A stretch of 63,593 bases of DNA, filler included, from Octopus bimaculoides (lineage: Eukaryota), in assembly GCF_001194135.2 (NCBI RefSeq). It is 6 parts of 6 records of this genome, joined end to end, with 100 filler letters (N's around TTAATTAATTAA, not from the genome) between each part and the next. Parts side by side here need not be neighbours in the genome. Positions count along the whole stretch, not along the records: positions 24,636 to 54,202 come from NC_068994.1; 5 more parts are not named here. One strand, written 5' to 3'. The notes beneath the pieces were generated by a model that was not told the DNA's origin, ran no database searches, and saw only the letters and a list, made by a program, of their open reading frames with translations. This document shows, piece by piece, positions 29,698-46,816 of the stretch (position 1 is the stretch's first letter; each line of letters opens with the position of its first letter). The translations under genes and the position numbers were made by a program.

Positions 29698-29752
29698 NNN
29701 NNNNNNNNNNNNNNNNNNNNNNNNNNNNNNNNNNNNNNNNNNNNNNNNNNNN

Positions 29753-29786
<34 letters not shown>

Positions 29787-29954
29787 TTGTACGACGTGCT
29801 TCTTTCAGTTTCTGTCTACCAAATCCACTCACAAGGCTTTGGTCAGCCCGAAGCTATAGAAGAAGACACTTGCCCAAGGTGCCACGCAGTGGGACTGAAC
29901 CTGGAACCATGTGGTTCGTAAGCAAGCTACTTACCACACGACCACTCCTACGCC
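29461..29954 (-). mobile_element. SINE family 1, near full length (gap inside its microsatellite)
   Basis: Head GGCGTAGGAGTGGTCGTGTGGTAAG...GGTTCAGTCCC (A/B-box-like), central CA/TA repeat, AAGAGTA tail. Confidence 0.9.
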
Positions 29955-30378
29955 TATGTCATATATACATATATACATAATATACATATATACATAATAA
30001 ACATTATACATGTATAAACAACTATTTGAGGTTGTGAAATAACGAACGCTCCAAAGGAGAATCGAATTATCTATCAGCTGTTTCCTAGGCAAACATAACT
30101 TCATCATTTGTGCTATATTCGGTTTACGATTTTGCTTTGCCAAACTCGGGCAAAAATATCTGCTTGTTGTACTGGATATTTACCACTTCACACTTCTTAC
30201 ATATCTGAAATTTAGCAGCAACTATCAATGTAGAGTTAGGTTTCTTTTTCGTTATTAATGAATATTTACGACTGGGTGCCCAAATAACATGAATTAAGCA
30301 TTAAGAAATACACTTGACAATTTGATTATTAAGAAAATTTTTGATGGAAAATCATTTTGATTAATTTATTATTTTCAG

Positions 30379-30474
30379 ATACACAAATGAATGTAACACA
30401 TCTTTTTGAATTATGTTTAATGAATGACACTTGCGATAAAAACCAGTTTCCCGAATTAATTAATATCGAATCAG
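30379..30474 (+). CDS. Internal coding exon (96 nt, phase 1-1) of a predicted membrane-anchored mucin-like glycoprotein: DTQMNVTHLFELCLMNDTCDKNQFPELINIES
   Basis: Acceptor ttattattttcAG, donor TCAG|GTAAGA, open frame, length divisible by 3, two N-glycosylation sequons (NVT, NDT), splices in frame to 31763. Confidence 0.7.
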
Positions 30475-30906
30475 GTAAGATTTTTAAGAGCGGTAATTTC
30501 TCTATTAATATTTTACTTGATAGAATGTCATGTGAATCCCACAGAAGGCACTCAGCTTTATCTATATTACAAGAGCAACTCAATTTTAAAGGCTACCGTT
30601 CTCAAAGACAATGTCAACGGTCTAATTTGTAATGACAGTAACAATTCTTAAAACAATAACGTGACGCTGTTCATGTTTTTCATAAATGTATCAACAAAGT
30701 ATAAGAAAGGAAATGGATTTTGTTTGTGATCAAAATCAAAGAGCTAACTCGTGTCATATGGAGTTTACCTCTTATTCTGCACTTCGATAATGGTATCTTT
30801 TTGTACAGCTGTGAGTTCCGGCGTGGTAACTGATAAGATTTCCATTCTCTATAGAAAGTGGTGTGTTAGATTCAGATAACAATGTCATTAAGATTAACAG
30901 AAATAG

Positions 30907-31143
30907 TTTCTTATTTCTTTATTGCCCACAAGGGGCTAAACATAGAGAGGACAAACAAGGACAGACAAAGGGATTAAGTCGATTACATCGACACCAGTGC
31001 GTAACTGGTACTTAATTTATCGACCCCGAAAGGATGAAAGGCAAAGTCGACCTCGGCGGAATTTGGACTCAGAAACATAAAGCCAGACGAAATACCGCTG
31101 AGCATTTTGCCCGGTATGCAAACGTTTCTGCCAGCTCACCGCC
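30907..31143 (-). mobile_element. SINE family 2, tail variant A (Tx1-like tail)
   Basis: Head GGCGGTGAGCTGGCAGAAACG, B-box-like GAGTCCAAATTCC; body shared with 32856-33073. Confidence 0.9.
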
Positions 31144-31762
31144 CTTAACCAAAATAGTTTCTATCGCATTATGTGATGTTCACGTAGCTACTGAATATGT
31201 AGCTGAATGCATAGTCATTGTGCTTCTACTGTAGTTAGCATGTACGAGCATTACACAACTGCTTATTCTTAGGAGTAGCTTCTTTAGCCCATTATGACAA
31301 GCTGAGAGAATAAAAAAGTAAAAGAAAAGTTAATATAGGGTGAAAGTTGGGATTGACAAGAACCGTATCCAGGAGAAACGCTACAAACATTAGGAATTAG
31401 TGCTACATATAGATTACTTTTATATTTGTCTGTGGGTAAGAAAACAGAAGAATTGATGGTAGCATTTGAGATGTTCAGTACCATTTTAACGACATATTCT
31501 ATATTATTAGATGATATAAATATGTCAAAAAGTGGAGTACTTTTTGGCGGCAAGTAAAGAATTTAGAGCCATTTTAAGGTTTATTTCATATCTTGGATAA
31601 TACTATCATCTAAAAAAGTTTCTTTTTGTTTTATATCATTATTTCTTCATTTATTGTTTCTTCCTTTTATATCATTATTTCATTTGTTATTTCTTCATTT
31701 GCTTTTATTGCAACTACCCAAAGCATTCTAATTGTGTAATCTTCATGCATTTTTGTTTTCAG

Positions 31763-31945
31763 TTTGGCTGCTTGAAATAGAAGGCTTAGAAACTGCAGCG
31801 GTAGATTTGAGGAACAACAAACGTCATAGCTGCAGAGTTGACTTAAAGTTGAATACGACAGAAACAAAATCACAGACTATGCTTTGTCTAAGTTATCAAA
31901 ATTTTTCTGATATTAGAACTATTCATATTGACAACTGTGCCGCTG
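31763..31945 (+). CDS. Internal coding exon (183 nt, phase 1-1): VWLLEIEGLETAAVDLRNNKRHSCRVDLKLNTTETKSQTMLCLSYQNFSDIRTIHIDNCAA
   Basis: Acceptor ttttgttttcAG, donor GCTG|GTAACA, no stops, three Cys and sequons NTT and NFS, frame continuous with neighbouring exons. Confidence 0.72.
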
Positions 31946-32544
31946 GTAACATTAGTGTATGTATATATGTATATATATATGTGTGTGTGTGAGTGTGTGT
32001 GTGTGTATGTGTGTGTGTGCGTGTGTGTGTGTGCATGTGTGTATAGATATATGTATGTATGTATGGGTGAATGTCTGTTTATTTGCATGTGTGTATATAT
32101 GATTGTTTGCTTGCTTGCTTATTTTTCTTTTTTTAATCTAAATTCATTCTCTAAGAATGAAATGATTTCTAACAAGAAAAGATAGCCGCATCGCAGGAGT
32201 CCGAATGCTTATTTCATTACATTTTGAATTTTAGAAAACTCTTGAATATTTTGCAAAGTACTTGTTTAGCCGGTAACTTCCTTTATCGGAAAACCTCAGC
32301 TTTTCGAGATTGTCACTTAACTCAGCGAAATGCAGCAATAATTATTGGTATAAATATAAATTCATAATCCAGGTAGAGCAGCTGTAAGTTTGAAACATTT
32401 CTTCGTAAATATTCTTCCTAACTCATTTTGAAAGAAACTATCACATCTGTACATTAGCATTCGTTTCTGCTTCAAACACCTATATCAGGCTTGTTATGTT
32501 TTCAACTGGTGAATGATTTCATGGAACGATCGGGAAAGTCAATC

Positions 32545-32635
32545 TCAGTGAGGTTTGAACTCAGAGAATAGAAAGCCAGGACAAATACCACAAGACGTTC
32601 TACCAGATGCCTGAATGACTCTTCCAGTTCGTTGT
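32545..32635 (-). mobile_element. Decayed SINE family 2 head fragment
   Basis: ctcagtgaggtttgaactcagagaatagaaag resembles ctcggcggaatttgaactcagaacgtaaag. Confidence 0.45.
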
Positions 32636-32756
32636 TTTAGTTCATGTGTTAATATGCATTCGCCAACAGAAGTACTTTCTGTATTTATCCCAGATAGCAT
32701 TATATATTGTTTTAGCAACAACATTATGCTGTGTTTAAAGGAACTGGGGAGTGTAG

Positions 32757-32792
<36 letters not shown>

Positions 32793-32855
32793 AATATACA
32801 TATATATGTTTATACACACACACACACACACACATAAACACACACAGAAGTGCGA

Positions 32856-33073
32856 AATAATCTTTTCTACTCCAAGCACAAAGCCCTAAATTTTGGGGGA
32901 GGGGGCCAGTCAATAAGCTCGACTCCAGTTCGCAACTGGTACTTAATTTATCGACCCCGAAAAGATGAAAGGCAAAGTAGACCTCGGCGGAATTTGAACT
33001 CAGAACGTAAAGACAGACGAAATACAGCTAAGCATAACACCCGGCGTGCTAACGTTTCTGCCAGCTCACCGCC
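32856..33073 (-). mobile_element. SINE family 2, tail variant B
   Basis: Same head and body as 30907-31143, different last about 80 nt. Confidence 0.9.
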
Positions 33074-33539
33074 TTAGTAATGTGAAATAATCGACACCTT
33101 GGAGCTTAAAGTGCTTCATTATGTCTTTTATTCATGAGATATTTTGGAGCTAGCTCCTGCTTATAGCTTGCAAAATTATACTGCCATCCATCAATTTTCC
33201 ATTCCTGTGATGGTCGTAGACTCCTCAGGTACCTCTTTCATTGGTTCCTATCAAAACTAACCGTCATTAGACTTTCTAGTTGGATTCTCAAGCGCGACCA
33301 TCCGAGATCATTTCGTTCTTGATCAACTCCGAGATCTCTTGCCGGTCGGCTCAGCTTGAAGAATCTGTCTTTCCTGCAATATTCTAATCACATGTCCATG
33401 GTAACAGAACAGTGGCCTCTCAATGCTGAGAAATAGCAACTCGACCTGGAGAGACTCCCTGATCTCCAAACTATACAACCTATCAAGTGATGTTACTCTA
33501 AGATCCTTCGGAACTCCATCCGTCTTTGTATTTGCGATG

Positions 33540-33850
33540 GTATATAGCTTTTACGAATGCACAAATATCTGTGTTTGGGTAATTGGTGTTATGTCAAAAC
33601 CTTTCAACGTAAGTGTTGGAATTCGGTAGGGATGTGTATTGTCACCGCTCGTTTTCATAATGTAATGACATGTGTAACCATTGTGGAAGTGGTGCCATAC
33701 CTGATAGGTGAAGGATCAGTCGATTGATATTTGCAGACAACATGGTGCTACTGGGATCATCAGAAGGTAATCTCCAGCACGCACCGAATGGGTTTGTTGT
33801 AGAGTACAGCAAGGCAAGAATGAGAATTAGTAAAATTATAAAGCCTTCAG
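33540..33850 (+). mobile_element. RTE-like reverse transcriptase relic
   Basis: PFNVSVGIR*GCVLSPLVFI and FADNMVLLGSSEGNLQHA motifs (QGCxLSP and FADD regions). Confidence 0.7.
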
Positions 33851-34440
33851 CAAAATGTAGCTTGAGTCCAAGGTGGGCTACTGTTCCCGTTAATGTTAGC
33901 ATCCATATGTATAATCCTTTATTCATTCATTCGTATAGTCCTTTATTCATTCGTTAGAGTACGCTAGGCCTGTAATTCTAGAGTCACATGGTTCTCTTCA
34001 CTTTTCAGTACATGTTTGATGTTTTGATTGTTTGGTATATCAATGTATTGATTGCAGCTGTCAGGAGCTGTCTGAATTAATTTTAAAGCCTCTTCCTTGA
34101 TCTTTTTTCTGAGAGAAAAACTGTCAATATCATAGTCCTTGCGGAAGTTTCCAGTAAATGTCGAGAACTCACTGACTTTAATTCTCTAGAGAAATTTCTT
34201 CTATAGACCAACCAAGTAAATCAAATGTTGATATCAGTACTAGTACAGCAAATGAATTGTAGGATCTTGTTTTGTTGTAACAAGAAAGCTCCGACTGCCA
34301 TATTTCTTTTAAGTTTAGCATAATATTCTTTGGCCAATTTATCTTCGCTCACTGTGCCGTTGTATGATATATTTTATATAATCGACTAGTCCCCTCCCAT
34401 CAAATTTCAGGCCTTGTGCTTTTAGTAGAAAGAATTTTGG

Positions 34441-36585
34441 GTCCTGATCAATTTAGATCGGTCTAAAGCTTTTGATAGGGTTGACCTTCTATATCTGGCG
34501 GCGGTCCTCATAGCAGCTGGTTTCGGGCCTGTATTCAGGTGCTAGATCGCTGCAATGCACAGTGACATCTGTTCAGTAGTAAGAGTGAACGATCGCCTCT
34601 CAGAACCATTCATGCGCTCGGTCCGGCAAGGTTTCCTCCTCTCGTTTCTCTTGTATGTACTGACTCTCGAGCCACTACCACACAAACTGGAGGCGTTGAG
34701 AGGCATTCCGCGTGACCTAGGGCGTGGGAGATGCGTGTTGGCATATGCCAACGACGTCACCGTAGTGGTGTCGGATCATAAAAACATAGAAATGATCGGC
34801 ACCGCTCTCAGGGACTACGAAACGGTTTCAGGATCGTCGATTAACCGGAAAAAATCAGTGGGCTTGCGGCTCAGCACCTGGAGAAGTAAGTCCATGCCGT
34901 CCAACTGTGTCGTTGAGCGCTGGGCAGACGGACCGGTTAAATTGTTCTCGGTCTAGTTTGGTCCGGACCTCCAGATGTACAAAAACTGGGACGAGATAAC
35001 GAACTGGATGACTACTCTCACCCAGAAATGGGCCAAGAGAAAGCTATCCTTGAAAGATCGGGCAGAAGTGGCTAACGCGTATATCGCATTCGTCATCTAC
35101 TATCGTTTGACCGCCGTGCTTTGTCCCGGCCACCGTCTGATTACGCTGGAGCGTATACTCATCCATTTCTTGAGGAAGGGACGCATCTCGATGATCAGGT
35201 GGTCTATCTGTTGTCAACACCCACTGCATGGTGGCCTGAGCATGCCGCGGTTGATGATGCACAGACATGCGCTGAGGCTACGACATCTCCAGTGTTTCCT
35301 TGACTGTGAACAGGTGTGGTCGCCGTTCGCCAGACACGTATTTCCGTTGCTAGTTTCTTTAACGGAGCTGCAGCTTTGAGTATTACAGAGACCGAAAGAG
35401 GACATTTGGAAAGTGGAATGTCTTCAAGCGCTCACAGCCCTCAGTCAATTGGACACTACGATAGGTAGAACGTCCACATTAGCTTTTTTAAGAGGATTAG
35501 TGGAGAGAAGTGCGACGACGTTCTTGGAGAGAACTTGGGCGTCGAAGATCAGCTAGCCGTTCTTTTCCGGAGAACTTTCGGCCCAGGACCGATGGATAAT
35601 TTCCAAACATCTCTGGCCTGGCAGTGCTAGTGGGGAGCTTTGCCTGTGCGAGATCAACTTTACCGGCACGGAAGTGTCGTCAGCCGAACATGTCCGAGAT
35701 GCGCGCAAGACGACGAGAGGTCCTGCATGTACTCGTCCAGTTCTCGAGTATTGCTGACCTGTGGGTCTATGTCGAATACCTGCTGTCGCGTGTGGGATGG
35801 GTCCGGCTGAAAACTGAATCCATCGTGAAGATCGTCTCGCCACCTTCCTCTAACCGGGAAGTAGAGGCTATGTTTATATGTATGGTGGCCATGGCAAAGA
35901 AGTTCTGTGATGGACGTGATTGAAGAGACTGAAGACAAACACTTTTCTCTTTGGCCAATCCCTGATCAACTTCTTCAAGTTTCACGTGGAAAGGAAAATA
36001 AGGTTAGAGAGGGAAGTGTTGTCTTCTAGCCAGTTTGCTGGAAGGTGGATGAAAATGGCGCGAATGGTGCGAGTGAACGGGTCTGCATTGAGTATATGTC
36101 TGCATTGAGTATATGTCTACATTGAGTATANNNNNNNNNNNNNNNNNNNNNNNNNNNNNNNNNNNNNNNNNNNNNNNNNNNNNNNNNNNNNNNNNNNNNN
36201 NNNNNNNNNNNNNNNNNNNNNNNNNNNNNNGTATATGTCTGCATTGAGTACATGTCTGCATTGAGTATATGTCTGCATTGTGTATATCTCTGCATTGTGT
36301 ATATGTCTGCATTGTGTATATGTTTACAATGAGTATATGTATAAAGAAAAGGGAAAGCGGCACCTGCTCCAAAAGTCAGGGTACTCATGGTTTTTATGGA
36401 TTTTTTCCATGAGCAGTCCTCGAACGTCTCCACCCTATTAAGGATTACATAGTGTTGATTTTTTAAAATTTTGTTAGTCTTGTTTACATCAACACACACT
36501 CACGCACATACACACATACATTGTTTTGTCCTGTACTGTCCATGATGTTTTTCTTAATGTAAATCCTTGTGGTTAATAAAGAAAT
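34441..36585 (+). mobile_element. Tx1/L1-clade-like LINE, 5'-truncated, frameshifted ORF2 plus 3' UTR
   Basis: LINLDRSKAFDRVD, SVRQGFLLSFLLYVLTLEPL, YAND, WAKRKLSLKDRAEVAN, PLHGGLSMP; 3' end ccttgtggttaataaagaaat followed by (ATC)n. Confidence 0.88.
36081..36336. repeat. 17-bp minisatellite (GTCTGCATTGAGTATAT)n inside the LINE, partly gapped
   Basis: Visible. Confidence 0.9.
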
Positions 36586-36677
36586 CATCATCATCATCAA
36601 CATCATCATCATCATCATCATTAATATTGTTGTCGTCGTTGCTGCTGCTGCTGTTGTTGTTGTTGTTGTTGCTTTTG

Positions 36678-36709
<32 letters not shown>

Positions 36710-36727
36710 GGTGGTGGTGGTGGTGGT
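36586..36727. repeat. Compound (ATC)/(GTT)/(GGT) microsatellite
   Basis: Visible. Confidence 0.9.
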
Positions 36728-36734
36728 ATTAACT

Positions 36735-36950
36735 CGACGAGCTGGCAAAATCGTTAGCGCATCGAACAAAATACCTACCGATATTTCTTTCGGTTCTTCA
36801 CGTTCTGAATTCAAACCCCACCGAGGTAAACGTTGCCTTTCTTCCTTTTGATCATGATAAAATAAAGTACCATTTAAGTAGTGAGGTCGATGTAATCAAC
36901 TCACACCCTCCCTCTAAAACTGCTAGTTTTGTGTCAAAAATTGAAGTAAT
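36735..36950 (+). mobile_element. Diverged SINE family 2 copy (tail B type)
   Basis: gagctggcaaaatcgttagc ... ttctgaattcaaaccccaccgagg ... gtcgatgtaatc. Confidence 0.7.
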
Positions 36951-37005
36951 TGATGCTATTATCATTATCATTGTTATTTCTTTTAGATTAAAGTGACTTT
37001 ATTAG

Positions 37006-37080
37006 TTCGCAACGTGTCTGTCATATATTATGCTACAAGAGACGGAGATTACTGTGGCTGTTGCCGGTGGTATGTAGGAG
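37006..37080 (+). CDS. Probable internal exon (75 nt, phase 1-1): VRNVSVIYYATRDGDYCGCCRWYVG
   Basis: Consensus donor GAG|GTAAGT at 37081. The acceptor at 37005 keeps the frame; an alternative AG at 36986 would be phase 0 and out of frame with the preceding exon. Cys/aromatic-rich with an NVS sequon. Confidence 0.5.
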
Positions 37081-38204
37081 GTAAGTATAATAGTGATAAT
37101 TATTATTATTCGTAGTGGCTGGCGCGTGTCGTATCGTTCATAAATTTGTTTATTTTTGTGTCTCCAAAAGTTGTTAATGGTTTAATTTTGTTACTAAACG
37201 CTTGTTGAAGCCACAACCATTACACAGAACAGTTTAGTTTTTTTCGTGTCTTCATTTGTAATTTAATTTCCATTGATTAAGCTTTCGTAATTCTCCCACC
37301 GTGCTTTTCTTGACCAATAAATTATTTCTCCTTACTAGAGACAGGATTTTAATTAATCAAACTTTCTTGAATTCTTATATTAACTATTAAACACTGATCT
37401 GATCAATACTATTTAAATTAGCATAGAGAAATATAGGCATGACACATACCATACAACATTGATTCTTGATTTATTAAAAGTATCTCCACTTCAAGAATCA
37501 AGAATTCTTCACCGTTGATATGTCAACAGACATCATCAGCACAACTGTCTTACTAGCTAAGGAACTTTGACATATACAAAAAGAGTAGGACACATTTATG
37601 GCTTGGGTAACTTACATAGACCTTTTTCTTCATGGAATGTCAACTCAGGAGTTTTTCTGAGCCTTGAGGTTATCTCCCCTTTTAATTTGGAGCTAGTCTC
37701 AGTCGCCATTTTGGTAATTGTGACATATCCTCTAGAGGCGCATATAATTTTGATAAATCATGAATTTATATTGTATTGCATTTGATATATCTGTATTTGC
37801 TGTGTTGTGTACATACATATCACTGGCCACTCTTAGTTATTTATCTTTGCTCGCTTTTGTTTAAATTATGCAAATTACTTTAGTTATATACAGTATTAAG
37901 GCTATAGTCCGGTTTTGACAATGAAATGTGTCAAGAAAACCAGAAAACCATTTGTTTTCGGATGTAATTGCGCTTATACCATTGTCATTATAACCTAATG
38001 GTGTATTTTAATTTGTAATTAACTTCTACTAATGGATTTCATATAAAAATCATTAGGTGTAGGTTTATTGTTTACTCTTCGACAGCATTATTTCGGAGTA
38101 ATCAAATATATTAAGATTTATAATGATTTTGAGGGAACGAAAACAAGTACGATCACTGATGTTTCGTTTGATTGATTTTATTAAGAACTGTAAGGTAGCG
38201 ATAT

Positions 38205-38400
38205 GACATAATTGTTAGCACGTCGGATAAAATGCTTTGCGATATTACTTCATACTCTTTGCGTTTTGTGTTCAAATTCCGTCAAGGCCGAATTTATCTT
38301 TCGTCCTTTGGGAGACGATGAAAGGTAGTAGCTGAGGACTGGAGTCGATGTAATCGACTTCTTCACTTCCCTCAAAATTGCTGGCCTTGTGCCAAAATTA
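38205..38400 (+). mobile_element. Diverged SINE family 2 copy (tail B type)
   Basis: gttagcacgtcggataaaatgc ... gttcaaattccg ... gtcgatgtaatcgact ... ctggccttgtgccaaaatta. Confidence 0.7.
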
Positions 38401-38453
38401 GAGAGATTTTAGAGAAAGGTGTTTCAGCGTAACCCTATATATTTTTCTTCCAG

Positions 38454-38786
38454 AAGCATTACCAGAGATAACCACAACCCTTCTAACAGAAGAAATAACT
38501 ACTGTTAATACTGACTCTACACCCCAAACGGAAAATTTTAGCACAAATTCGGAAACATCTGTTACCGAAGAAAGTGTAAGCAAAATCACCACACCAGAGA
38601 CATTAGTTACCGAGACAAGTGTAACATCTCCCGAAAGAGGACTAATATCTACCGAGGGAACGACAGAGAGACCAACGAATGAAGGAGATCTAAGCGAGAC
38701 CACCGAACCAGAGACTACAGCATTACTAACTACTGGAGGTAGTATTGCTACAACCAATTCTGAAAGTGGGATGTTTACATCAACAG
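38454..38786 (+). CDS. Mucin-like Ser/Thr/Glu/Pro-rich exon (333 nt, phase 1-1): EALPEITTTLLTEEITTVNTDSTPQTENFSTNSETSVTEE...SESGMFTST
   Basis: Acceptor tatatttttcttccAG, donor ACAG|GTAAAC, 111 codons without a stop, strongly Thr/Ser/Glu-biased. The ORF track shows only the antisense frame. Confidence 0.85.
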
Positions 38787-38926
38787 GTAAACAAGAAAAC
38801 AAAAAAAAAAATCATTTTCTCGTCACGTGATGAAGTAGGTAAATAAGTATATGTTTATTTTTGTACAAGTTTAACAGCGCGATAAAATAGTGGAATATAA
38901 ATAATATCGGTACACGGAGAAAATTC

Positions 38927-38973
<47 letters not shown>

Positions 38974-39095
38974 GACAGTTAATAAAGAATAGGTGATGAG
39001 GCGCGTTATAAGAGAAAAGGACGAGAACGAAATAGAAAGAAAGCACATTAGACAGATCGAAGAGAAACCTCTGCATGGCCAATTTTGAAGACGTA

Positions 39096-39314
39096 TTCTT
39101 TTATTTTACTTGTTTCAGTCATTTGACTGCAGCCATGCTGGAGCACCACTTTTAGTTAAACAAATCGACTCCAGTATTTATTCTTTGTAAGCCTAGTACT
39201 TATTCGATCGGTCTCTTTCGCTGAACCTCTAGGTTACAGAGACGTAAACACGCAAACATCGGTTGTCAAGCGATGGTGGGGGGACAAACACAGACACACA
39301 AATATATACATATA

Positions 39315-39356
<42 letters not shown>

Positions 39357-39524
39357 TATATACGACGGGCTTCTTTCATTTTCCATCTACCGAATCCACT
39401 CACAAGGCTTCGTTCGGCATGAGGCTATAGTGGGAGACACTTGCCCAAGGTGCCACGCAGTAGGACTGAACCTAGAACCATGTGGTTACGAAGCAAAATT
39501 CTTACCGCATAGCCAATCCTGGGC
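39096..39524 (-). mobile_element. SINE family 1, near full length
   Basis: Colinear with 29461-29954. Confidence 0.9.
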
Positions 39525-40229
39525 TTGGTTAAAAAAAGGGCAATTAAAAAAAACTGAGAGTCTAATTGTAGCAGCCCAAGATCAAACGATAAAAACAAAC
39601 AACTTGAGCAAAAATGTATATGGAGAGAATGTGTCAGAAAAATGTAGACCCTGTAAGAAATGAAGGCATGACCAGGTTGTAAAAGTTATACTTTGGAAAC
39701 TGTGCCAGAAATGGGAATTTGAAGCTGGAAACACATAGTATGATAATCGAGAATACTGGAATTGGAGAAGTGTAAAATGTTGTGGAACTTTCCTATTCAA
39801 ACGGACAAGAAGTTAGAAAATAAAACAGATATAACGATTGTAGATAAGGAAAAGCGAAGTTGCTTACTTATCGACGCATCATGCCCGTTTGATTGCAGGA
39901 TCATTAAGAAAGAGGAAGAAAAACAAAACAAAAAATACAATCACTTAAAGTTTGAAATAGAGCATGCGAACAGTAAAGGTCGTGCCTATAATCATTGGTG
40001 CGTTGGAAACAGTTAGCTAAGATATAGACAAATGGCTGAAGGAGATTAAAATAGAATGCCCGGTAGAGCTCATAGAGAAAGTTTGTCTCTTAGGGACAGC
40101 AAGGATTATCGGGAGGGTTCTAAGCACTTGAAAGACTGCTGAAAACTTGTGGATATCTAAGGTTACAGGTAGTAACCCGCTACCCACATAACTTCTACCA
40201 GGAATAAGACCGAACCGGAGCCAAACCAA

Positions 40230-40230
<1 letters not shown>
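39525..40230 (+). mobile_element. R4/Dong-like fragment A (zinc knuckle/RLE region plus 3' UTR)
   Basis: WLKKGQLKKTESLIVAAQDQTIKTN, CRPC, MLWNFPIQTDKKL, LLIDASCP, LGTARII; ends in (TAA)n. Confidence 0.8.
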
Positions 40231-40303
<73 letters not shown>

Positions 40304-40304
40304 T

Positions 40305-40380
<76 letters not shown>

Positions 40381-40410
40381 TAGTCAAAATAATAAAATAA
40401 TAAAAAATAA
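40231..40410. repeat. (TAA)n/(CAA)n microsatellite
   Basis: Visible. Confidence 0.9.
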
Positions 40411-41669
40411 TAATAAAATAGTCAAAATTGATAGAAAAATCCGCAAGCTACTGACTTGTAATAAGATGCACCATCCAAAGGCAGACGTGGATCGTCTGTA
40501 CCTTCCCAGAGCTCAGGGAGGTCGAGGCTTGATCCAGCTTGAACTTACGTACAAAACCACCACAATCGGACTGGCCAAATACCTTGAAACAACCAACGAT
40601 TGGATGCTGAAACTTGTTGAAAAACATGAAAGACCGAAAAAACTTCACTCTACTCTGAAAGAGAGCAAAAAATTCGCTACCGAACTCTTAGATACCCACC
40701 AGCTTGATCAGGTTGAAGGAAATGCGCCAACTGTTGCTGCAAAGAAAATAAAATTAATTGCAAAGACAAAAGGNNNNNNNNNNNNNNNNNNNNNNNNNNN
40801 NNNNNNNNNNNNNNNNNNNNNNNNNNNNNNNNNNNNNNNNNNNNNNNNNNNNNNNNNNNNNNNNNNNNNNNNNNNNNNNNNNNNNNNNNNNNNNNNNNNN
40901 NNNNNNNNNNNNNNNNNNNNNNNNNNNNNNNNNNNNNNNNNNNNNNNNNNNNNNNNNNNNNNNNNNNNNNNNNNNNNNNNNNNNNNNNNNNNNNNNNNNN
41001 NNNNNNNNNNNNNNNNNNNNNNNNNNNNNNNNNNNNNNNNNNNNNNNNNNNNNNNNNNNNNNNNNNNNNNNNNNNNNNNNNNNNNNNNNNNNNNNNNNNN
41101 NNNNNNNNNNNNNNNNNNNNNNNNNNNNNNNNNNNNNNNNNNNNNNNNNNNNNNNNNNNNNNNNNNNNNNNNNNNNNNNNNNNNNNNNNNNNNNNNNNNN
41201 NNNNNNNNNNNNNNNNNNNNNNNNNNNNNNNNNNNNNNNNNNNNNNNNNNNNNNNNNNNNNNNNNNNNNNNNNNNNNNNNNNNNNNNNNNNNNNNNNNNN
41301 NNNNNNNNNNNNNNNNNNNNNNNNNNNNNNNNNNNNNNNNNNNNNNNNNNNNNNNNNNNNNNNNNNNNNNNNNNNNNNNNNNNNNNNNNNNNNNNNNNNN
41401 NNNNNNNNNNNNNNNNNNNNNNNNNNNNNNNNNNNNNNNNNNNNNNNNNNNNNNNNNNNNNNNNNNNNNNNNNNNNNNNNNNNNNNNNNNNNNNNNNNNN
41501 NNNNNNNNNNNNNNNNNNNNNNNTTTTAATTTTTTTTTAATACATGTTTTACCTGTGAATTTGCGTGTGTAAACTGGGATTGCATACAACGAGTTTCTCT
41601 GCCCTACGTGTACGGAAAACACTCGGCGAGAAATGGAAGAACATTTGAAGAAAGAAGGAAAAAAACAAC

Positions 41670-41670
<1 letters not shown>
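40411..41670 (+). mobile_element. R4/Dong-like fragment B (post-RT region, gap, probable 3' UTR)
   Basis: IDRKIRKLL...HHPKADVDRLYLPRAQGGRGLIQLE, the conserved post-RT motif of RLE LINEs; the middle is N. Confidence 0.75.

Positions 41671-41743
<73 letters not shown>
41671..41743. repeat. (TAA)n microsatellite
   Basis: Visible. Confidence 0.95.
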
Positions 41744-41746
<3 letters not shown>

Positions 41747-42735
41747 GCACCACCCAAAATCTGACATATAAAGGCTATATACACAACGTATCCCAAAGTA
41801 ACCACCATAGGACTACGGAAATACCTGCTTCAGAAGCAAGGAAAACTAATACAAATGGCCACAAGGCACGAACAGAACAAAAAACTGTTTTCAGTCTTTA
41901 AGGAAGCTGACAAATACAAAAAAAAAGTATTAATACTTAATAACTATGAAGAAAAAAAAGATGCAAAAAAGCTGTAAAAGAACTGAAATCCAAACAAAAA
42001 CTGGAATACCAACGGGCCGTGATTAAACGATGGCAAGAAAAACCCCTTCATGGCAAATATTGGGTTGAGCTAAACCGAAAAGAAATAGACAAAGCAAAAT
42101 CCCAACAATGGCTGAGAAGCTCAGGACTCAAAGCAGAGACTGAAGGATAATTGCAGCACAAGATCAAAGCCTTCTCACCAGAAATCACCAAAAACATGCA
42201 ATGAAAAGAAATACAAGTAACTGCAGAATATGTGGAGACGGAGAAGAAACAATAAATCATATTGTCTCTGGCTACTCAGTCCTGGCTAAGAAGGAATATA
42301 TTCACAGACATGACAGATTTGGGACATGTATACACTGGAAGCTATACCAACACTATGGAATAACAATAAAAAAAAGGTGGTATAGGTACACGCCTGAAAA
42401 GGCTACAGAAAATGAGAAAGCAACCATACTCTGGGATATGGGATATGCCAATACACACAGATAGAGAAATTAAGGCCAATAGGCCAGATATAGTTGTCAG
42501 AGATCACAAAGAAAAAAATGCTTTCTAATCGATGTCTCAATACCAACAGATGACAATGTTTCTCTAAAAGAAACGGATAAACTTTCAAAATACAACGATC
42601 TGAAAATCGACGTAACTCGAAACAATTTCTATTATAGTGGGCGCATTAGGTATGATAAAAAAGACATTCAGACAAATACATAACAAAAACACCAGGACTT
42701 ACAAGTATATATAGTATACAGAAAATAGCACTCCT
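41744..42735 (+). mobile_element. R4/Dong-like fragment C
   Basis: LHHPKSDI, KPLHGKYW, QWLRSSGLKAETEG, CRICGDGEETINHIVSG, HRHD, ILWDM, NRPDIVVRD, LIDVSIP. Confidence 0.85.
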
Positions 42736-42737
42736 AC

Positions 42738-43020
42738 TGTTCCTGTTATTGTAGGTGTTCTAGGTATGATAAAAAAGGGATGTCAGAAACATCTAGATAA
42801 GATTCCAAGAGAACCATGTTTCAGAGAACTCCAAAAGATTGCACTGACCGGTACTACCCACATCCTTAGAAAAACCTTATCCATTTAAATGTCTGTGTTG
42901 TATTACATGAAGCTATTTCCGTATTTCCCCTCCCCAAACTTTCAGACATAATGTAACATCTCTTATCTTTCACTCGCTCCAGGACGCAAGCTGTGTCTCG
43001 CTAAGTGTTTGTAACAAACA
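42738..43020 (+). mobile_element. R4/Dong-like fragment D (ORF end plus 3' UTR)
   Basis: PVIVGVLGMIKKG...LQKIALTGTTHILRKTLSI* repeats the region just covered by fragment C with a different sequence. Confidence 0.75.
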
Positions 43021-43376
43021 TGCAAAAATGCTTTGTTTATAATGATCAAATTGCTCGTGCAGCACATTAGCTCACTCTTTCCATCGAATCAACTTTGAAC
43101 AGGTGCACAGTGTTCCATGCATCAGGTGTCTAAGTTATCTCAGAGCAACGCGAGATAAAGTGTATTGCTCAAGAACACAACGCACCAATAATAACACCAG
43201 AGGAGCTTATGACCTTGAGATATCTGTTGATGATACGGAAAGGTTTCGAACATTGTAATGGCTTCAGAAGAGCATGCAATACCTCTTAATAATTTTCTGC
43301 ATGGGGCAAAGCATCTCTAATGTTTATTTCACCGATCGCTATAACGTTGTACAAAAATATACATTCACTGTTTACT

Positions 43377-43414
<38 letters not shown>

Positions 43415-43611
43415 NNNNNNNNNNNNNNNNNNNNNNNNNNNNNNNNNNNNNNNNNNNNNNNNNNNNNNNNNNNNNNNNNNNNNNNNNNNNNNNNNNNNNN
43501 NNNNNNNNNNNNNNNNNNNNNNNNNNNNNNNNNNNNNNNNNNNNNNNNNNNNNNNNNNNNNNNNNNNNNNNNNNNNNNNNNNNNNNNNNNNNNNNNNNNN
43601 NNNNNNNNNNN

Positions 43612-43643
<32 letters not shown>

Positions 43644-44181
43644 TATATACATATTTAGCATTATCATGTAAAGTGTAAAGACAAATAAGTATTATTGAGT
43701 ATTATCATGCACGCATATATGTATGTATGCATGTATGTATGTATGTATGTATGTATGTATGCGTGTGTATGTGCGCGCGCGAGTATGTGTGTATGTATGT
43801 ATGTATGTATGTATGTATGTATGTAGTATGCATGTATGTATATATGTATGTACGCATGCACATATGTATATTCTTTTCTGTTTTTAATTATTTGAATTTT
43901 TCTTTTAAGGTAGGAGCTGGTTTGTAACTATATAAATAATAAAAACAAATTCACATTTTAAATTTGAAAAAAGTCTTACATGTATTTACTGTTCCAGGTA
44001 CAAATTGTATTTGTAATAAGGGAATCAGCAAGTTGATTTCTTTTCATTTTTCTTTACGTATGTCGTTATCCACTTTATTTCAAGATTTCTTGCCAATAGA
44101 GAAAGAACCGGTTTCTAACCTAAATCCAATGTTCCTTCATTGGAATTTCAATATCAACAACAGGGTATTTTTGTTTGTTTG

Positions 44182-44215
<34 letters not shown>

Positions 44216-44574
44216 TGTATGTATGCATGCATGTATGTATGTATGTATGTATGTATGTGTTATGTATAACAAGATCTACTGTCAGCTGTCGGCCTGAAGT
44301 TTTAGAAAGTAGATGCAGTCATTGATGTTGTAATGAACAGGGCTGCTCTCTCAAGTTTTGAGAACAATGATGTCTTCCTTCCTGTATTGGTGTTTACTAG
44401 AATTAAAAGCTACTATAACTACCTCATGTTATTTGTCATGTCGCCATCGATAGCACCCACTAGCTAAGACTCTTGAGAAGCTGTAGAGATTCTGAAAATG
44501 TCGAACGGTCTTCTTTCAGTACAGAAGACACTGGAGAACACTCCACTCCAGCTCCAAGTGTGAAAGTTTGAAAG

Positions 44575-46000
44575 GATATGGATGATATAAAAGAAAGCTT
44601 CGTCTGATTAGGACTTCTTCAAAAGATATAGGGATAGAGTATGGCTGGGATAAATATTTTTATATGGTTGCGAAATGATGGAGAACTACAATCCTATCAT
44701 TGCTATCAGTGACCTGACTATTTCCGCAATATCTGAAGAGGAATGCTATAAGCATATAGGAATAGATGGAAATATTTCCTATTAAGAAACTTCTAAGAAG
44801 GAACAAGTAACGAGAAGCAATAAACCGATAGTTTACAATGTGTTTGCTGTACCAGTGCTCGTACCTACATTTGGGTGATTTGATTAGATGCTTGATGGAA
44901 TCCTGATATTGATGTCAAAACCTGAAAATTGTTAATATATTTCAGGAATTGCTAGATTAGCAACAGTAATTAAATGTCAAATGAGATGATGCGATATTCA
45001 CAGGCTGTTAAGATCGATGTTAAATCTCTGCCATCTGTACTTAAAAGGAAAACAAAACGACAGAGGCTAAAATCGATCCAAACAACTTTTGAATGTTGCA
45101 TCATCTTCCTTCGATTACATTTAACCACCAAAAGTCGATGTCCTGCCATGGACCAAGCCTGCATACGTGAGACCGATAACTTGAGAATCGAAAAATTCCT
45201 CGAAAATATTCAGACTGATGACCCAGGAAATACGCCCAAAGAAGTTATACAACTCCACTGTAATAGATCATTAGAATAGAAGCTGTATACTGTTCACTGT
45301 AGTTGAACGCTTTCTAAGAAGAGCTGAAACTAGGCACTAAGCCATTAAACTCATTCCTCGTTGCTAAGAAGATATTTAGTTTCATTAAATAACAACTAGA
45401 TGCTAAATCTTTAAAGATCCTTGAGGCTAACAATATATTTATTTTTGTCGTTTTTTTTTTTCGAAAGAAAATAGCTTGCAAAATATCAGCAACTAATTTC
45501 TCATGGGTTTAGAATTATTACATTCAAACAAAATACTTTCACATTAAAAGCATCATTCGAAAGGCATGAGAACATTTTTATGAAGAAAAGCAGGGAAGAA
45601 TAGTGGAACACATTATTTTTGGTAGATATTTCAAGAATGGTGGAGAAGCAAGAAGAAAACTGACTTCTTGATCATTCGTAGACTGAGGCTTGGTTTTGAA
45701 TACTGAACCAGACGATCGCAAAGCGAAATTGCTTGCCACGTGACTATAGTTACGCCAATGCATTACAGGTTAGCTACACAATAAAATGGCCAAACAGAAT
45801 ATACATCCCTGTTTAACATAGCTGTCTGACTACCTTGGAGTGTCTTTTGTGAAGTCGCTGGATAAAAATGTAATCCCTCAGTTACACCTGCTCAGCATAG
45901 TGTCAGTTCGTCCAAGACCTTGTGAGAGGAAACCTCTTCACAGAAACCGTGTGAGCACCTGTAGAAAGGACTGTTTCTATCCAGGAGAGGTAGGCTCAAT
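44575..46000 (+). mobile_element. Old, heavily decayed R4/Dong-like relic
   Basis: DMDDIK (YMDD-like) at 44575-44592, EEECYKHIGI, NVFAVPVLVPTFG, VEHIIFG; many stops. Confidence 0.5.
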
Positions 46001-46462
46001 CTATCGTCTGGTTTAATAGTGCCATCTAGTTTTGGGGTGTCTTTAGCAGTGTCCACTCAGGGCTAAAGGCAAGTTTTTTCCGTTCGGGCCTCCACTTCTG
46101 AGACTGTAAAGTGAAGCCTGTGTGCTCTCTTTCCTTCTCTGACCAACCTACAAAACATTCTGGGAATACATTCTGGCATGGTCTCAAAATTTGTTTCGGA
46201 ACGCTCGCCATTCACATATTTGCCCAAATTATTAAATCCAGTGATCGTACAATTACTTATTCTTATTGTTACTCTTTCTATTAGAGAATCTTTTTAGCAT
46301 TCTCTTGTCAGGCTGATTGTTGTATCTCTAATAACTTGATTTGTTATAAAAGTTTAAAGTTGAGTTTAAGATTAATAATCTAAATACTTAAACACTCGAT
46401 AACTTAAGTCTTTCAAAATCTTCAAATACACATTTAAGTCTCACTGTGTTTCTATATTGCAG

Positions 46463-46779
46463 TCTCGCTATTCACTGAAACCGAGCCTATTCCTCCAGCA
46501 AACACAACACTGTGTCCGTGTGAGTGTGAAAACGAACGACACAACCTAACCCAAAAGGAACTCGATAAAAAGCTACTTGAGATTGTTTCGGAGTTAGCAT
46601 TTCTGCGAAATTCAACTTCTAAATACATCCGTTCTAAAGTCAGTATGCCCGACGCACGATTATCTTCGAAATGTATCGGCGCTATCGCTGTCCTTTTCAT
46701 TGTCGTACCATTTACAATGATAATTTCTATAGACGCCCTATATCTTTTCAAATGGTTCTACGGCGTAATTATGAGTTAG
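46463..46779 (+). CDS. Terminal coding exon: VSLFTETEPIPPANTTLCPCECENERHNLTQKELDKKLLEIVSELAFLRNSTSKYIRSKVSMPDARLSSKCIGAIAVLFIVVPFTMIISIDALYLFKWFYGVIMS*
   Basis: Acceptor tgtgtttctatattgcAG, phase 1 matching exon 38454-38786, TAG at 46777-46779, hydrophobic C-terminal segment, AATAAA about 30 nt downstream. Confidence 0.88.
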
Positions 46780-46810
46780 AACTATTTCAGCTCTATGTAT
46801 CTGCAAATTG

Positions 46811-46816
46811 AATAAA
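46811..46816 (+). promoter_or_regulatory. Candidate polyadenylation signal of the mucin-like gene
   Basis: AATAAA 31 nt after the stop codon. Confidence 0.45.

What the first reader, a model, noticed from the sequence alone, without database searches (positions are those of the whole stretch)
30379..46816. Hidden five-exon gene for a membrane-anchored mucin-like glycoprotein, largely missed by the ORF track
Seen: exons 30379-30474, 31763-31945, 37006-37080, 38454-38786 and 46463-46779 have GT/AG boundaries and splice into one stop-free frame of about 334 aa. That frame has nine N-X-S/T sequons, a Cys-containing N-terminal region I cannot assign to a known domain, a 111-aa Thr/Ser/Glu stalk, a hydrophobic C-terminal helix and a very short tail. 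Inference: a type I membrane glycoprotein (skin, mucus or sensory surface?) whose signal-peptide exon lies upstream or in a gap. Exon 3 is the least certain.
Basis: partly seen in the sequence, partly recalled or inferred. Interest (0 to 1): 0.7.

Follow-up and report, generated by a model that had tools for sequence, protein, structure and literature searches.

The report
Unannotated octopus membrane mucin-like gene
The five exons are real and form the last part of an octopus gene for a sugar-coated cell-surface protein from an uncharacterised family found across molluscs, but one splice junction was misplaced and the gene's front end lies outside this piece.

Summary
Homology shows this is not chance. 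A full HMMER scan found 216 relatives (E<=1e-3); all 30 I looked up that carry an organism name are molluscs. The best three are octopod proteins from Argonauta, Octopus sinensis and O. bimaculoides that align across all five exons.

Exon maps of those three paralogs show the same terminal five-exon layout and phases. The better model is exon 2 = 31763-31956 and exon 3 = 36987-37080, giving 343 aa.

All three N-gaps lie in repeat- or TE-rich introns, and the paralogs have no exon between the flanking exons.

The product has three parts: an octopod-specific Cys-containing beta-sandwich domain, a Thr/Ser/Glu stalk, and a mollusc-wide C-terminal cassette. The cassette reads CxCxC, helix, TSxYxRxKxSxxDxRxS, TM helix, short tail. 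It has no Pfam or PDB match.

The paralogs carry 2-6 further upstream exons, including PLAT domains, and none is detectable in this piece. The gene is therefore 5'-truncated here. Expression and function are untested. This is an ordinary new family member. The cassette itself may be undescribed.

The parts
30379..30474 (+). Coding exon A, 96 nt, phase 1 to 1. It encodes the start of the membrane-proximal Cys domain (..LCLMNDTCDKNQFPELINIES). It needs an upstream coding exon.
   Evidence: The acceptor is ttattattttcAG and the donor CAG|GTAAGA. It has the same position and phase as the 111-, 87- and 102-nt exons of P0005, P0001 and P0007, and the following intron splits the same V-W codon pair. 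It ranks third of 969 fragments with the paralog HMM.
31763..31956 (+). Coding exon B, corrected: 194 nt, phase 1 to 0.
   Evidence: It has the same length (194 nt) and phases as the matching O. sinensis exon; the Argonauta and O. bimaculoides exons are 179 and 221 nt. The donor is AGT|GTATGT. It is the top hit of the paralog HMM (E=1.3e-4) and is hit by P0001 in tblastn at E=0.024.
36987..37080 (+). Coding exon C, corrected: 94 nt, phase 0 to 1. It encodes IKVTLLVRNVSVIYYATRDGDYCGCCRWYVG, which holds the conserved C..W motif.
Evidence: The matching exon is 94 nt in O. sinensis and Argonauta and 91 nt in O. bimaculoides, with the same phases. The correction removes a 10-aa alignment gap and raises the HMM score from 27.6 to 41.8 bits. 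The HMM match begins at residue 1 of the open fragment, which starts at 36987.
38454..38786 (+). Coding exon D, 333 nt, phase 1 to 1. It encodes the Thr/Ser/Glu-rich stalk, presumed O-glycosylated.
   Evidence: The acceptor is tttttcttccAG and the donor CAG|GTAAAC. The stalk is 41% Thr+Ser and is not a tandem DNA repeat. Paralogs have one stalk exon of 369-399 nt with the same phases at the same place, and a scallop relative also has a single phase 1 to 1 stalk exon. The frame is open on both strands, so ORF length alone carries little weight.
46463..46779 (+). Terminal coding exon E, 317 nt, phase 1 to the TAG stop. It encodes the mollusc-wide anchor cassette.
   Evidence: 111 family proteins hit it in tblastn, the best being P0151 at 51% identity and E=5e-22, which ends at the same stop position. 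All invariant and near-invariant cassette residues are present: C19, S60, D63, R65, S67, G72, D90. The cassette is a single terminal phase-1 exon in all four relatives mapped.
46513..46527 (+). CxCxC motif (CPCEC) at the start of the cassette.
   Evidence: The family consensus is CxCxC, and the middle Cys is near-invariant.
46552..46596 (+). Predicted amphipathic helix (QKELDKKLLEIVSEL), preceded by a conserved N-x-T sequon.
   Evidence: AlphaFold2 with a 63-sequence alignment predicts helix 30-44; the whole exon-5 model has mean pLDDT 89.4. The family consensus is N.T.EEL.
46615..46668 (+). Conserved basic juxtamembrane motif, TSKYIRSKVSMPDARLSS. The family consensus is TSxYxRxKxSAxDxRxSS.
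   Evidence: Alignment A5: R65 is invariant, and S60, D63 and S67 are at least 90% conserved. AlphaFold2 predicts a short helix at residues 52-58.
46675..46743 (+). Transmembrane helix (IGAIAVLFIVVPFTMIISIDALY), with conserved Gly at its start and conserved Asp near its cytosolic end. An 11-residue tail follows (46744-46776).
   Evidence: The hydropathy maximum is 2.68. AlphaFold2 predicts one long helix at residues 66-103 with block-mean pLDDT of 90-98. G72 and D90 are near-invariant.
46811..46816 (+). AATAAA polyadenylation signal, 32 nt after the stop codon.
   Evidence: the sequence is shown.
36131..36230 (.). Assembly gap in the intron between exons B and C.
   Evidence: The same ~20-bp minisatellite unit (gtatatgtctgcattgagta) lies on both flanks. 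A reverse-transcriptase fragment lies just upstream at 34546-34953. Paralogs have no exon between the matching exons.
40774..41523 (.). Assembly gap in the intron between exons D and E.
   Evidence: Retroelement-like ORFs lie on both sides, including a zf-RVT match at 42144-42461. The flanks are unlike each other, so continuity is not shown.
43415..43611 (.). Assembly gap in the intron between exons D and E.
   Evidence: (TA)n microsatellite lies on both flanks.

Best explanation
The region holds the last five coding exons, the stop codon and the poly(A) signal of a genuine octopod protein-coding gene.

Shown:
- The corrected exons are 30379-30474, 31763-31956, 36987-37080, 38454-38786 and 46463-46779. 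They encode 343 aa.
- The protein has three parts: (i) a ~125-aa Cys-containing domain shared only with octopod paralogs, which is predicted to be a beta-sandwich in a paralog; (ii) a ~110-aa Thr/Ser/Glu stalk; (iii) a ~90-aa cassette encoded by one terminal phase-1 exon.
- The cassette reads CxCxC, N-glycan sequon, amphipathic helix, basic motif TSxYxRxKxSxxDxRxS, one TM helix, very short tail.
- In the relatives I looked up, all molluscs, this cassette is attached to unrelated ectodomains: PLAT, C-type lectin, EGF/IgGFc-binding and FAMeT-like by Pfam, and kringle by source name.

Inferred mechanism:
- The protein enters the secretory pathway through a signal peptide encoded further upstream, outside this piece.
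- It sits in the plasma membrane as a type I protein.
- The heavily O- and N-glycosylated stalk holds the beta-sandwich domain or domains away from the membrane as a binding or recognition surface.
- The conserved cassette is a portable 'stalk end plus anchor'. Its CxCxC and helix plausibly link chains by disulfides or coiled packing. Its invariant basic juxtamembrane motif plausibly acts as a recognition site for a processing or shedding protease, or for a membrane partner.
- The gene arose by paralog duplication and phase 1-1 exon shuffling.
For: Homologues: a full HMMER scan gave 216 relatives at E<=1e-3. The best were Argonauta hians GAB1604359.1 (query 12-329), O. sinensis XP_036364684.1 (query 16-325) and O. 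bimaculoides XP_014791170.1.

Exon layout: exact exon maps of these three paralogs give the same terminal layout, [87-111 nt, phase 1 to 1] [179-221 nt, 1 to 0] [91-94 nt, 0 to 1] [369-399 nt stalk, 1 to 1] [305-362 nt, 1 to stop]. The first intron splits the same V-W codon pair.

N-domain: with the corrected junction the alignment is gapless. An unbiased search of the piece with that HMM picks exons 2, 3 and 1 as its top three hits.

Cassette: all conserved Cys and Trp of the N-domain and all conserved cassette residues are kept. AlphaFold2 models the window's exon-5 peptide at pLDDT 89.4, with helices at 30-44, 52-58 and 66-103. A scallop relative with an unrelated ectodomain has the same layout of stalk exon (1 to 1) plus terminal cassette exon (phase 1).

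Distribution and topology: every named relative I looked up is a mollusc. Pfam finds PLAT, Lectin_C, EGF, IgGFc_binding and Methyltransf_FA in relatives. Some relatives have signal peptides, and the cassette is C-terminal in 134 of 156.

Other: AATAAA lies 32 nt after the stop. The SINE copies in the window match copies in Octopus and Argonauta loci at 70-92% identity, which fits an octopod origin.
Against: - No transcript or orthologue was found. The best relative is 36% identical by HMMER's measure and 28% by BLASTP, so expression and purifying selection are unproven.
- Exon A starts in phase 1, and no upstream coding exon, signal-peptide exon or PLAT exon is detectable in 24636-30378.
- The stalk and exon-5 frames are open on both strands, so ORF length alone is weak evidence.
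- Continuity across the 750-N gap is not shown.
- Every functional statement about the cassette is inference. It has no match in Pfam, in PDB sequences or in Foldseek.
Confidence: 0.85

Rival explanations
1. This is a recently dead or never-complete paralog fragment: a 3' gene piece that lost, or was duplicated without, its upstream exons and is not expressed.
For: No upstream exon was found within 5.7 kb. No orthologue or transcript more than 50% identical exists among 1.84 billion representative proteins. In O. bimaculoides, P0002 and P0007 lie on the same chromosome-scale contig (60,576,134 bp) and P0003 has an adjacent LOC number, a setting where partial duplicates are common.
Against: All five exons are open, with canonical splice sites, conserved phases, every conserved Cys/Trp and cassette residue, a stop at the conserved position and a poly(A) signal. 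In paralogs the intron upstream of the matching exon is up to 8 kb, so the missing exons may simply lie beyond the edge of the piece or in the gaps at 27467-27546 and 29698-29752.
Confidence: 0.12
2. This is an assembly chimera. The scaffold joins exons of two neighbouring paralogs across an N-gap, so the spliced frame does not exist in any one gene.
For: Continuity across 40774-41523 is not shown, and (TA)n on both flanks of 43415-43611 is only weak evidence. P0002 and P0007 lie on the same O. bimaculoides chromosome-scale contig.
Against: The exons come in the right order, strand and phase, with no duplicated or missing exon relative to three paralogs. The gap at 36131-36230 has the same minisatellite on both sides. 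Only one cassette exon exists in the piece.
Confidence: 0.05
3. The C-terminal hydrophobic segment is a GPI-attachment signal rather than a transmembrane anchor, so the mature protein is lipid-anchored.
For: In the octopod members the sequence stays hydrophobic almost to the last residue, with a tail of about 11 aa and only one Lys. Small residues (S-S) precede it.
Against: There is almost no hydrophilic spacer between the small residues and the hydrophobic core. The helix carries conserved Gly and Asp positions. Many relatives continue into long, basic cytoplasmic tails typical of stop-transfer anchors. No GPI predictor was available.
Confidence: 0.06
4. There is no gene: the open frames and GT/AG sites arise by chance in AT-rich, repeat-rich DNA.
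For: By my own estimate from base composition, about one stop-free run of 113 or more codons is expected by chance in the piece. Both long exons are open on both strands.
Against: Exon 5 has significant homology (E down to 5e-22, 111 proteins). The N-domain scores 41.8 bits against at most 11.1 for shuffles. Exon order is collinear, and intron positions and phases are conserved.
Confidence: 0.01

Closest known systems
Octopod paralogs: Argonauta hians GAB1604359.1 ('A-agglutinin anchorage subunit-like'), Octopus sinensis XP_036364684.1 (LOC118765933) and O. bimaculoides XP_014791170.1 (LOC106884345). XP_036366865.1 and XP_014791168.1 carry a shorter form of the domain.
   Same: They share the same membrane-proximal Cys domain (conserved C, C, C, C..W), a Thr/Ser-rich stalk and the same C-terminal cassette. 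Their terminal five-exon structure and intron phases match the window.
   Different: Identity is only 28% (BLASTP) to 36% (HMMER), so they are paralogs, not orthologues. They carry 2-6 more upstream exons, with PLAT domains in the upstream units of P0005 and P0007, that are not seen in this piece. Their database names come from low-complexity similarity to yeast wall proteins and say nothing about function.
Mollusc-wide proteins ending in the 'CxCxC, helix, TSxYxRxKxSAxDxRxS, TM' cassette. Examples: Pecten maximus XP_033724787.1, Littorina saxatilis XP_070196633.1, Magallana gigas K1Q7Y4, Mercenaria XP_053384114.1, Lymnaea CAL1526711.1.
   Same: The C-terminal ~90 aa are homologous, with the same conserved residues. 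The cassette is C-terminal, preceded by a Thr/Ser-rich stalk. In the scallop it is encoded by a single terminal phase-1 exon after a phase 1-1 stalk exon.
   Different: The ectodomains are unrelated: FAMeT-like, IgGFc-binding plus EGF, C-type lectin and PLAT by Pfam, and kringle by source name. Many have longer basic cytoplasmic tails. The octopod clade has S-M/I-P/E-D where others have S-A-x-D.
PLAT/LH2 domain (Pfam PF01477)
   Same: The domain is a two-exon unit with phases 1 to 0 and 0 to 1, like the upstream PLAT units of the paralogs. The paralog model is a beta-sandwich. The best Foldseek hits are lipoxygenases, which carry an N-terminal PLAT domain according to general knowledge.
   Different: There is no Pfam PLAT hit for this domain. 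hhalign against the upstream PLAT-like units gives probability 0.1%. Foldseek gives E=0.02 and TM 0.34-0.37, which is not significant.
Vertebrate membrane-tethered mucin-like glycoproteins (for example MUC1-type mucins and CD43/CD34-type sialomucins). This is a comparison from general knowledge, not from a tool result.
   Same: It would work in a similar way: a type I protein with a Ser/Thr-rich, presumably O-glycosylated stalk that projects from the cell surface on a single TM helix.
   Different: There is no sequence relationship. No SEA domain or other known mucin module was found (no Pfam hit). The stalk is short (~110 aa) and non-repetitive. The cytoplasmic tail is almost absent.

Membership tests
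Octopod 'Cys-domain, stalk, cassette' paralog family (Argonauta GAB1604359.1, O. sinensis XP_036364684.1, O. bimaculoides XP_014791170.1) | Significant sequence similarity across the N-domain, stalk and cassette in one collinear alignment | tested here: met
   phmmer E=1.7e-19 and 9.6e-15, covering query 12-329 and 16-325. BLASTP E=1e-31 and 3e-28.
Octopod 'Cys-domain, stalk, cassette' paralog family | Conserved Cys/Trp pattern of the membrane-proximal domain (C18, C73, C90, C..W) | tested here: met
   These columns are invariant in alignments A1 and A2. The HMM built without the window scores it at 41.8 bits, against at most 11.1 for 2000 shuffles.
Octopod 'Cys-domain, stalk, cassette' paralog family | Shared terminal five-exon structure with intron phases 1, 0, 1, 1 | tested here: met
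Met with the corrected exon 2/3 junction: 96/194/94/333/317 nt, against 111/194/94/369/305, 87/179/94/372/341 and 102/221/91/399/362 nt in the paralogs.
Octopod 'Cys-domain, stalk, cassette' paralog family | Upstream exons with PLAT-like two-exon units and a start codon | tested here: not met
   No significant match in 24636-30378 by tblastn or HMM. The only signal-peptide-like candidate (29137-29194) lies in SINE-like sequence. The exons may lie beyond the edge of the piece, so this counts against completeness here, not against membership.
Mollusc-wide C-terminal anchor cassette (no Pfam entry) | CxCxC, then N-x-T and helix, then TSxYxRxKxSxxDxRxS, then a TM helix with conserved G and D, close to the C-terminus | tested here: met
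   All invariant and near-invariant positions (C19, S60, D63, R65, S67, G72, D90) are present. 111 family proteins hit the exon in tblastn. AlphaFold2 pLDDT is 89.4.
Mollusc-wide C-terminal anchor cassette | Encoded by a single terminal exon entered in phase 1 | tested here: met
   True for the window, Argonauta, O. sinensis, O. bimaculoides and Pecten. The Littorina map failed.
PLAT/LH2 domain (PF01477) | Match to the Pfam PLAT profile, or a profile-profile match to bona fide PLAT units | tested here: not met
   No Pfam hit at E<=10. hhalign probability is 0.1%.
PLAT/LH2 domain (PF01477) | Eight-stranded beta-sandwich fold superposable on PLAT | tested here: inconclusive
   The paralog model has 8 strands, pLDDT 70.8. 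The top Foldseek hits are lipoxygenases, but E=0.02-0.15 and TM 0.34-0.37. The window's own spliced domain could not be modelled.
Type I single-pass membrane glycoprotein | N-terminal signal peptide | not testable with these tools
   The 5' end of the gene is not in the piece. Relatives such as P0006, P0022 and P0116 have one.
Type I single-pass membrane glycoprotein | One C-terminal TM helix, with sequons and Cys on the N-terminal side | tested here: met
   Hydropathy maximum of 2.68 at residues 310-328, ten sequons, and eight ectodomain Cys plus the CxCxC. AlphaFold2 predicts a long helix at 66-103 of the exon-5 peptide.
SEA-domain membrane mucins | SEA or other known mucin module, and long tandem-repeat PTS domains | tested here: not met
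   No Pfam hit. There is no tandem repeat in the stalk exon.

The most novel reading that the evidence does not exclude
The C-terminal ~90-aa cassette may be an undescribed, Mollusca-wide mobile protein module. It reads CxCxC, glycan sequon, amphipathic helix, invariant basic motif TSxYxRxKxSAxDxRxS, then a TM helix with conserved Gly and Asp. A single phase-1 terminal exon would have been shuffled, usually together with a phase 1-1 Thr/Ser stalk exon, onto many unrelated ectodomains: PLAT, C-type lectin, EGF, IgGFc-binding, kringle, FAMeT-like and this octopod Cys domain. Its strict conservation would then reflect a shared mechanism, such as disulfide-linked oligomerisation plus regulated juxtamembrane cleavage or sorting, and not mere anchoring. 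The window gene would be one unannotated octopod instance of it.
Probability: 0.45. Interest if true: 0.5.

Novelty: new member of a known kind. Interest (0 to 1): 0.33.

Why it matters
For annotation, this adds a probably unannotated member to an octopod paralog family. It also gives a homology-corrected gene model and shows that frame compatibility alone can validate a wrong splice junction. Here two different junction pairs both keep the frame open, and only paralog exon structure separates them.

For biology, the gene itself is ordinary. What it points to is more interesting: a strongly conserved C-terminal stalk-end and anchor cassette in mollusc cell-surface proteins. The cassette is absent from Pfam and PDB and carries only automatic 'uncharacterized' or misleading names. 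If it controls oligomerisation, sorting or shedding, it would be a common organising element of mollusc cell-surface receptors, including lectin-type immune receptors. It is directly testable in heterologous cells.

Tried and rejected
- Pfam scan of the spliced protein and of 10+6 relatives: nothing covers the N-domain or the cassette.
- Word-index protein search, used twice (whole protein, then the N-domain alignment): no hits, even though the alignment contained pieces of database proteins. That index seems not to reach these eukaryotic entries, so I did not use the third search.
I did not try to get around this. I modelled the O. sinensis paralog's domain instead, with the window's exon peptides as separate alignment rows, and modelled the contiguous exon-5 peptide.
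- Foldseek on the cassette model: no matches. PDB profile search: only noise.
- Idea that the N-domain is a diverged copy of the upstream PLAT units: hhalign gives no support, so it stays inconclusive.
- Search for upstream exons by tblastn at E<=50, by a PLAT-unit HMM and by a signal-peptide scan: only one weak candidate, in SINE-like DNA.
- Exact-sequence look-up of the ATG-started tail of exon 5 in public assemblies: not on record.
- blastn of the piece against the paralog loci: only interspersed repeats match, with no synteny.
- Listing the ORFs of L003 was useless because the locus is heavily masked. The Littorina exon map failed.
- Four literature searches (LOC and accession numbers, database names, mollusc/exon shuffling/PLAT terms) found nothing relevant.
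- Mixed splice models (31945 with 36987, or 31956 with 37006) both run into stops.

Full report
**1. Observation**

Joined, they give one stop-free frame (starting at 30381) of 333 codons, ending in TAG at 46777-46779. All introns in that model are phase 1. AATAAA lies at 46811-46816, 32 nt after the stop.

- nine N-X-S/T sequons;
- a 111-aa stalk with 41% Thr+Ser and 57% Thr+Ser+Glu;
- a hydrophobic C-terminal helix, whose best 19-mer IGAIAVLFIVVPFTMIISI has a mean hydropathy of 2.68;
- a tail of about 11 residues.

The stalk exon is not a DNA tandem repeat. ORF length alone is weak evidence here. The piece is about 35% G+C, many long open frames are microsatellite or TE artefacts, and both long exons are open on both strands.

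**2. Gaps, tested first**

All three N-runs inside the finding are intronic.
- 36131-36230 has the same ~20-bp minisatellite unit on both flanks, so the two sides are most likely continuous.
- 43415-43611 has (TA)n on both flanks.
- 40774-41523 lies between unlike sequences in retroelement debris, so continuity there is not demonstrated.

The introns carry a reverse-transcriptase fragment (34546-34953, RVT_1 E=1.5e-5), a zf-RVT fragment (42144-42461) and several SINE copies. Three paralogs have no coding exon between the exons that flank these gaps. A hidden exon is therefore not expected. An extra phase 1-1 stalk exon could never be excluded from frame alone.

**3. Homology**

Pfam finds nothing, and the word-index search finds nothing. 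The exhaustive HMMER scan of 1.84 billion representative proteins finds 216 proteins at E<=1e-3.

The three best long hits align across the whole query:
- Argonauta hians GAB1604359.1, query 12-329;
- O. sinensis XP_036364684.1, query 16-325;
- O. bimaculoides XP_014791170.1.

Most other hits align only to the last ~90-130 residues. All 30 hits whose names I looked up are molluscs, covering cephalopods, bivalves and gastropods. tblastn of 156 family proteins against the piece hits exon 5 with 111 of them and hits nothing else at E<=1e-2. The best, O. sinensis XP_036366865.1, is 51% identical (E=5e-22) and ends at the same stop position.

**4. Gene model**

I mapped the exact exons of three paralogs onto their genomic loci. 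All three end with the same five exons:

| Exon | Length (nt) | Phase in to out |
|---|---|---|
| 1 | 87-111 | 1 to 1 |
| 2 | 179-221 | 1 to 0 |
| 3 | 91-94 | 0 to 1 |
| 4 (stalk) | 369-399 | 1 to 1 |
| 5 (terminal) | 305-362 | 1 to stop |

The first of these introns splits the same Val-Trp codon pair as in the window.

Moving the donor to 31956 (AGT|GTATGT) and the acceptor to 36987 gives exons of 194 and 94 nt. These lengths match the O. sinensis gene exactly, restore phases 1 to 0 and 0 to 1, and add 10 residues (GNIS|IKVTLL..). The alignment gap disappears. The two mixed combinations run into stop codons.

An HMM built from the three paralogous domains, without the window, gives these scores:

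| Sequence | Bits |
|---|---|
| Corrected N-domain | 41.8 |
| Best of 2000 shuffles | 11.1 |

Run blind against all 969 open fragments of the piece in six frames, the same HMM ranks the fragments containing exon 2 (E=1.3e-4), exon 3 (match starting at residue 1 of the fragment that begins at 36987) and exon 1 as its top three. They are collinear with the model.

The corrected product is 343 aa with ten sequons.

**5. What is missing**

Exon A begins in phase 1, so at least one upstream coding exon is needed. The three paralogs have 2, 6 and 6 further upstream exons. These include two-exon units, of which 3 of the 6 aligned units match Pfam PLAT, best E=4.8e-6.

No PLAT-like or other homologous exon is detectable in 24636-30378 by tblastn or HMM. 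The only signal-peptide-like candidate with a phase-1 donor (29137-29194) lies in SINE-like sequence. In paralogs the intron in front of the matching exon is 0.6-8 kb. The 5' part may therefore lie beyond the left edge, or the locus may be a 3' fragment.

**6. The protein**

(a) N-domain, exons A-C, about 125 aa. It is shared only with octopod paralogs, with invariant Cys and a C..W motif. I therefore modelled the O. sinensis paralog's domain, with the window's exon peptides as alignment rows. The model is an eight-stranded beta-sandwich with pLDDT 70.8 and pTM 0.65. The best Foldseek hits are lipoxygenases, but they are weak (E=0.02, TM 0.34-0.37). A profile-profile comparison with the paralogs' PLAT units shows nothing. 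'PLAT-like' remains unproven.

(b) Stalk, exon D. It is rich in Thr, Ser, Glu and Pro and is non-repetitive. It sits in the same position and phase as the stalk exons of the paralogs and of a scallop relative.

(c) Cassette, exon E. Its elements are CPCEC, NLT, helix QKELDKKLLEIVSEL, TSKYIRSKVSMPDARLSS, the TM helix and the tail KWFYGVIMS. In a 63-sequence alignment R65 is invariant and C19, S60, D63, S67, G72 and D90 are at least 90% conserved. The window has all of them. AlphaFold2 gives pLDDT 89.4 with helices at 30-44, 52-58 and 66-103. There is no PDB sequence match and no Foldseek match.

In relatives the cassette follows unrelated ectodomains: Methyltransf_FA, PLAT, Lectin_C, and EGF with IgGFc_binding by Pfam, and kringle by source name. 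It ends within 25 aa of the C-terminus in 134 of 156 relatives. A strict hydrophobicity test finds N-terminal signal peptides in at least 15 of 57 long members. In Pecten the cassette is again one terminal phase-1 exon behind a phase 1-1 stalk exon. This fits exon shuffling.

**7. Mechanism**

What is shown is the domain order, the conservation and the exon structure. Everything in this section is inferred from them.

The protein is most likely a type I cell-surface glycoprotein. Its glycosylated stalk would project one or more beta-sandwich binding domains from the membrane. The cassette would serve as a portable stalk end and anchor.

The alternating cysteines and the amphipathic helix suggest chain-to-chain linkage. 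The invariant basic juxtamembrane motif suggests recognition by a processing or shedding enzyme, or by a membrane partner. None of this was tested.

**8. Rivals**

- A dead or partial paralog, about 0.12.
- A scaffold chimera across a gap, about 0.05.
- A GPI signal instead of a TM anchor, about 0.06.
- Chance, about 0.01.

**9. Novelty and verdict**

The family already exists in public proteomes, but only as 'uncharacterized protein LOC...' or with misleading automatic names such as 'A-agglutinin anchorage subunit-like' and 'cell wall integrity and stress response component 1-like'. Four literature searches found no description.

No protein more than 50% identical over the full length to the window's product is in the representative library. 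The window gene therefore looks like an unannotated new member of a known but unstudied kind. Interest is modest. The more interesting lead is the cassette as a possibly undescribed mollusc-wide module.

Noticed in passing
window 34546-36003 (+ and - frames): A non-LTR retrotransposon remnant lies in the intron between exons B and C. The ORF at 34546-34953 matches Pfam RVT_1 (E=1.5e-5, below the gathering score). It is 64-67% identical at DNA level to copies in the O. bimaculoides locus L003.
   Followed up: partly
window 29753-29977, 30912-31145, 32855-33076 and 36735-36901: Several copies of short interspersed repeats (SINE-like, about 170-230 bp) match many copies in the O. sinensis, O. bimaculoides and Argonauta loci at 70-92% identity. 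This is the only DNA-level evidence here that the piece is octopod.
   Followed up: partly
window 39585-40771 and 41765-42461: Two partly overlapping sets of retroelement C-terminal ORF fragments lie on either side of the 750-N gap. They show similar peptides (...YKTTTIGLAKYLE... and ...TTIGLRKYLL...) and a zf-RVT match at 42144-42461. The gap may separate two copies of one element, which would explain the assembly break.
   Followed up: partly
window 36071-36290: A ~20-bp minisatellite (gtatatgtctgcattgagta) runs into both sides of the gap at 36131-36230.
   Followed up: yes
window 49361-49777 (-) and 50190-50576 (-): Two open frames of 139 and 129 aa lie downstream of the gene on the opposite strand. 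By eye they look like transposon-derived proteins (a Cys-rich segment followed by ..YIG-like.. motifs, and a ..FEWF.. DNA-binding-like segment), but neither has a Pfam hit at E<=0.01.
   Followed up: partly
loci L001 (O. sinensis) and L003 (O. bimaculoides): In the paralogs the extracellular region is built from repeated two-exon units (about 209-233 nt in phase 1 to 0, then 88-103 nt in phase 0 to 1). Three of the six aligned units match Pfam PLAT. The membrane-proximal Cys domain has the same two-exon layout but no detectable sequence similarity to those units.
   Followed up: yes
window 46438-46776 and 38401-38827: Both long coding exons are also stop-free on the opposite strand, for 101 and 137 codons. 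This probably reflects codon composition (ACN/GAR-rich). No antisense gene is suggested.
   Followed up: no
protein search tools: The word-index search returned nothing, even for an alignment that contained exact pieces of proteins held in the collection. The exhaustive HMMER scan found 216 relatives. A negative result from the word index is therefore not informative for eukaryotic queries like this one.
   Followed up: yes
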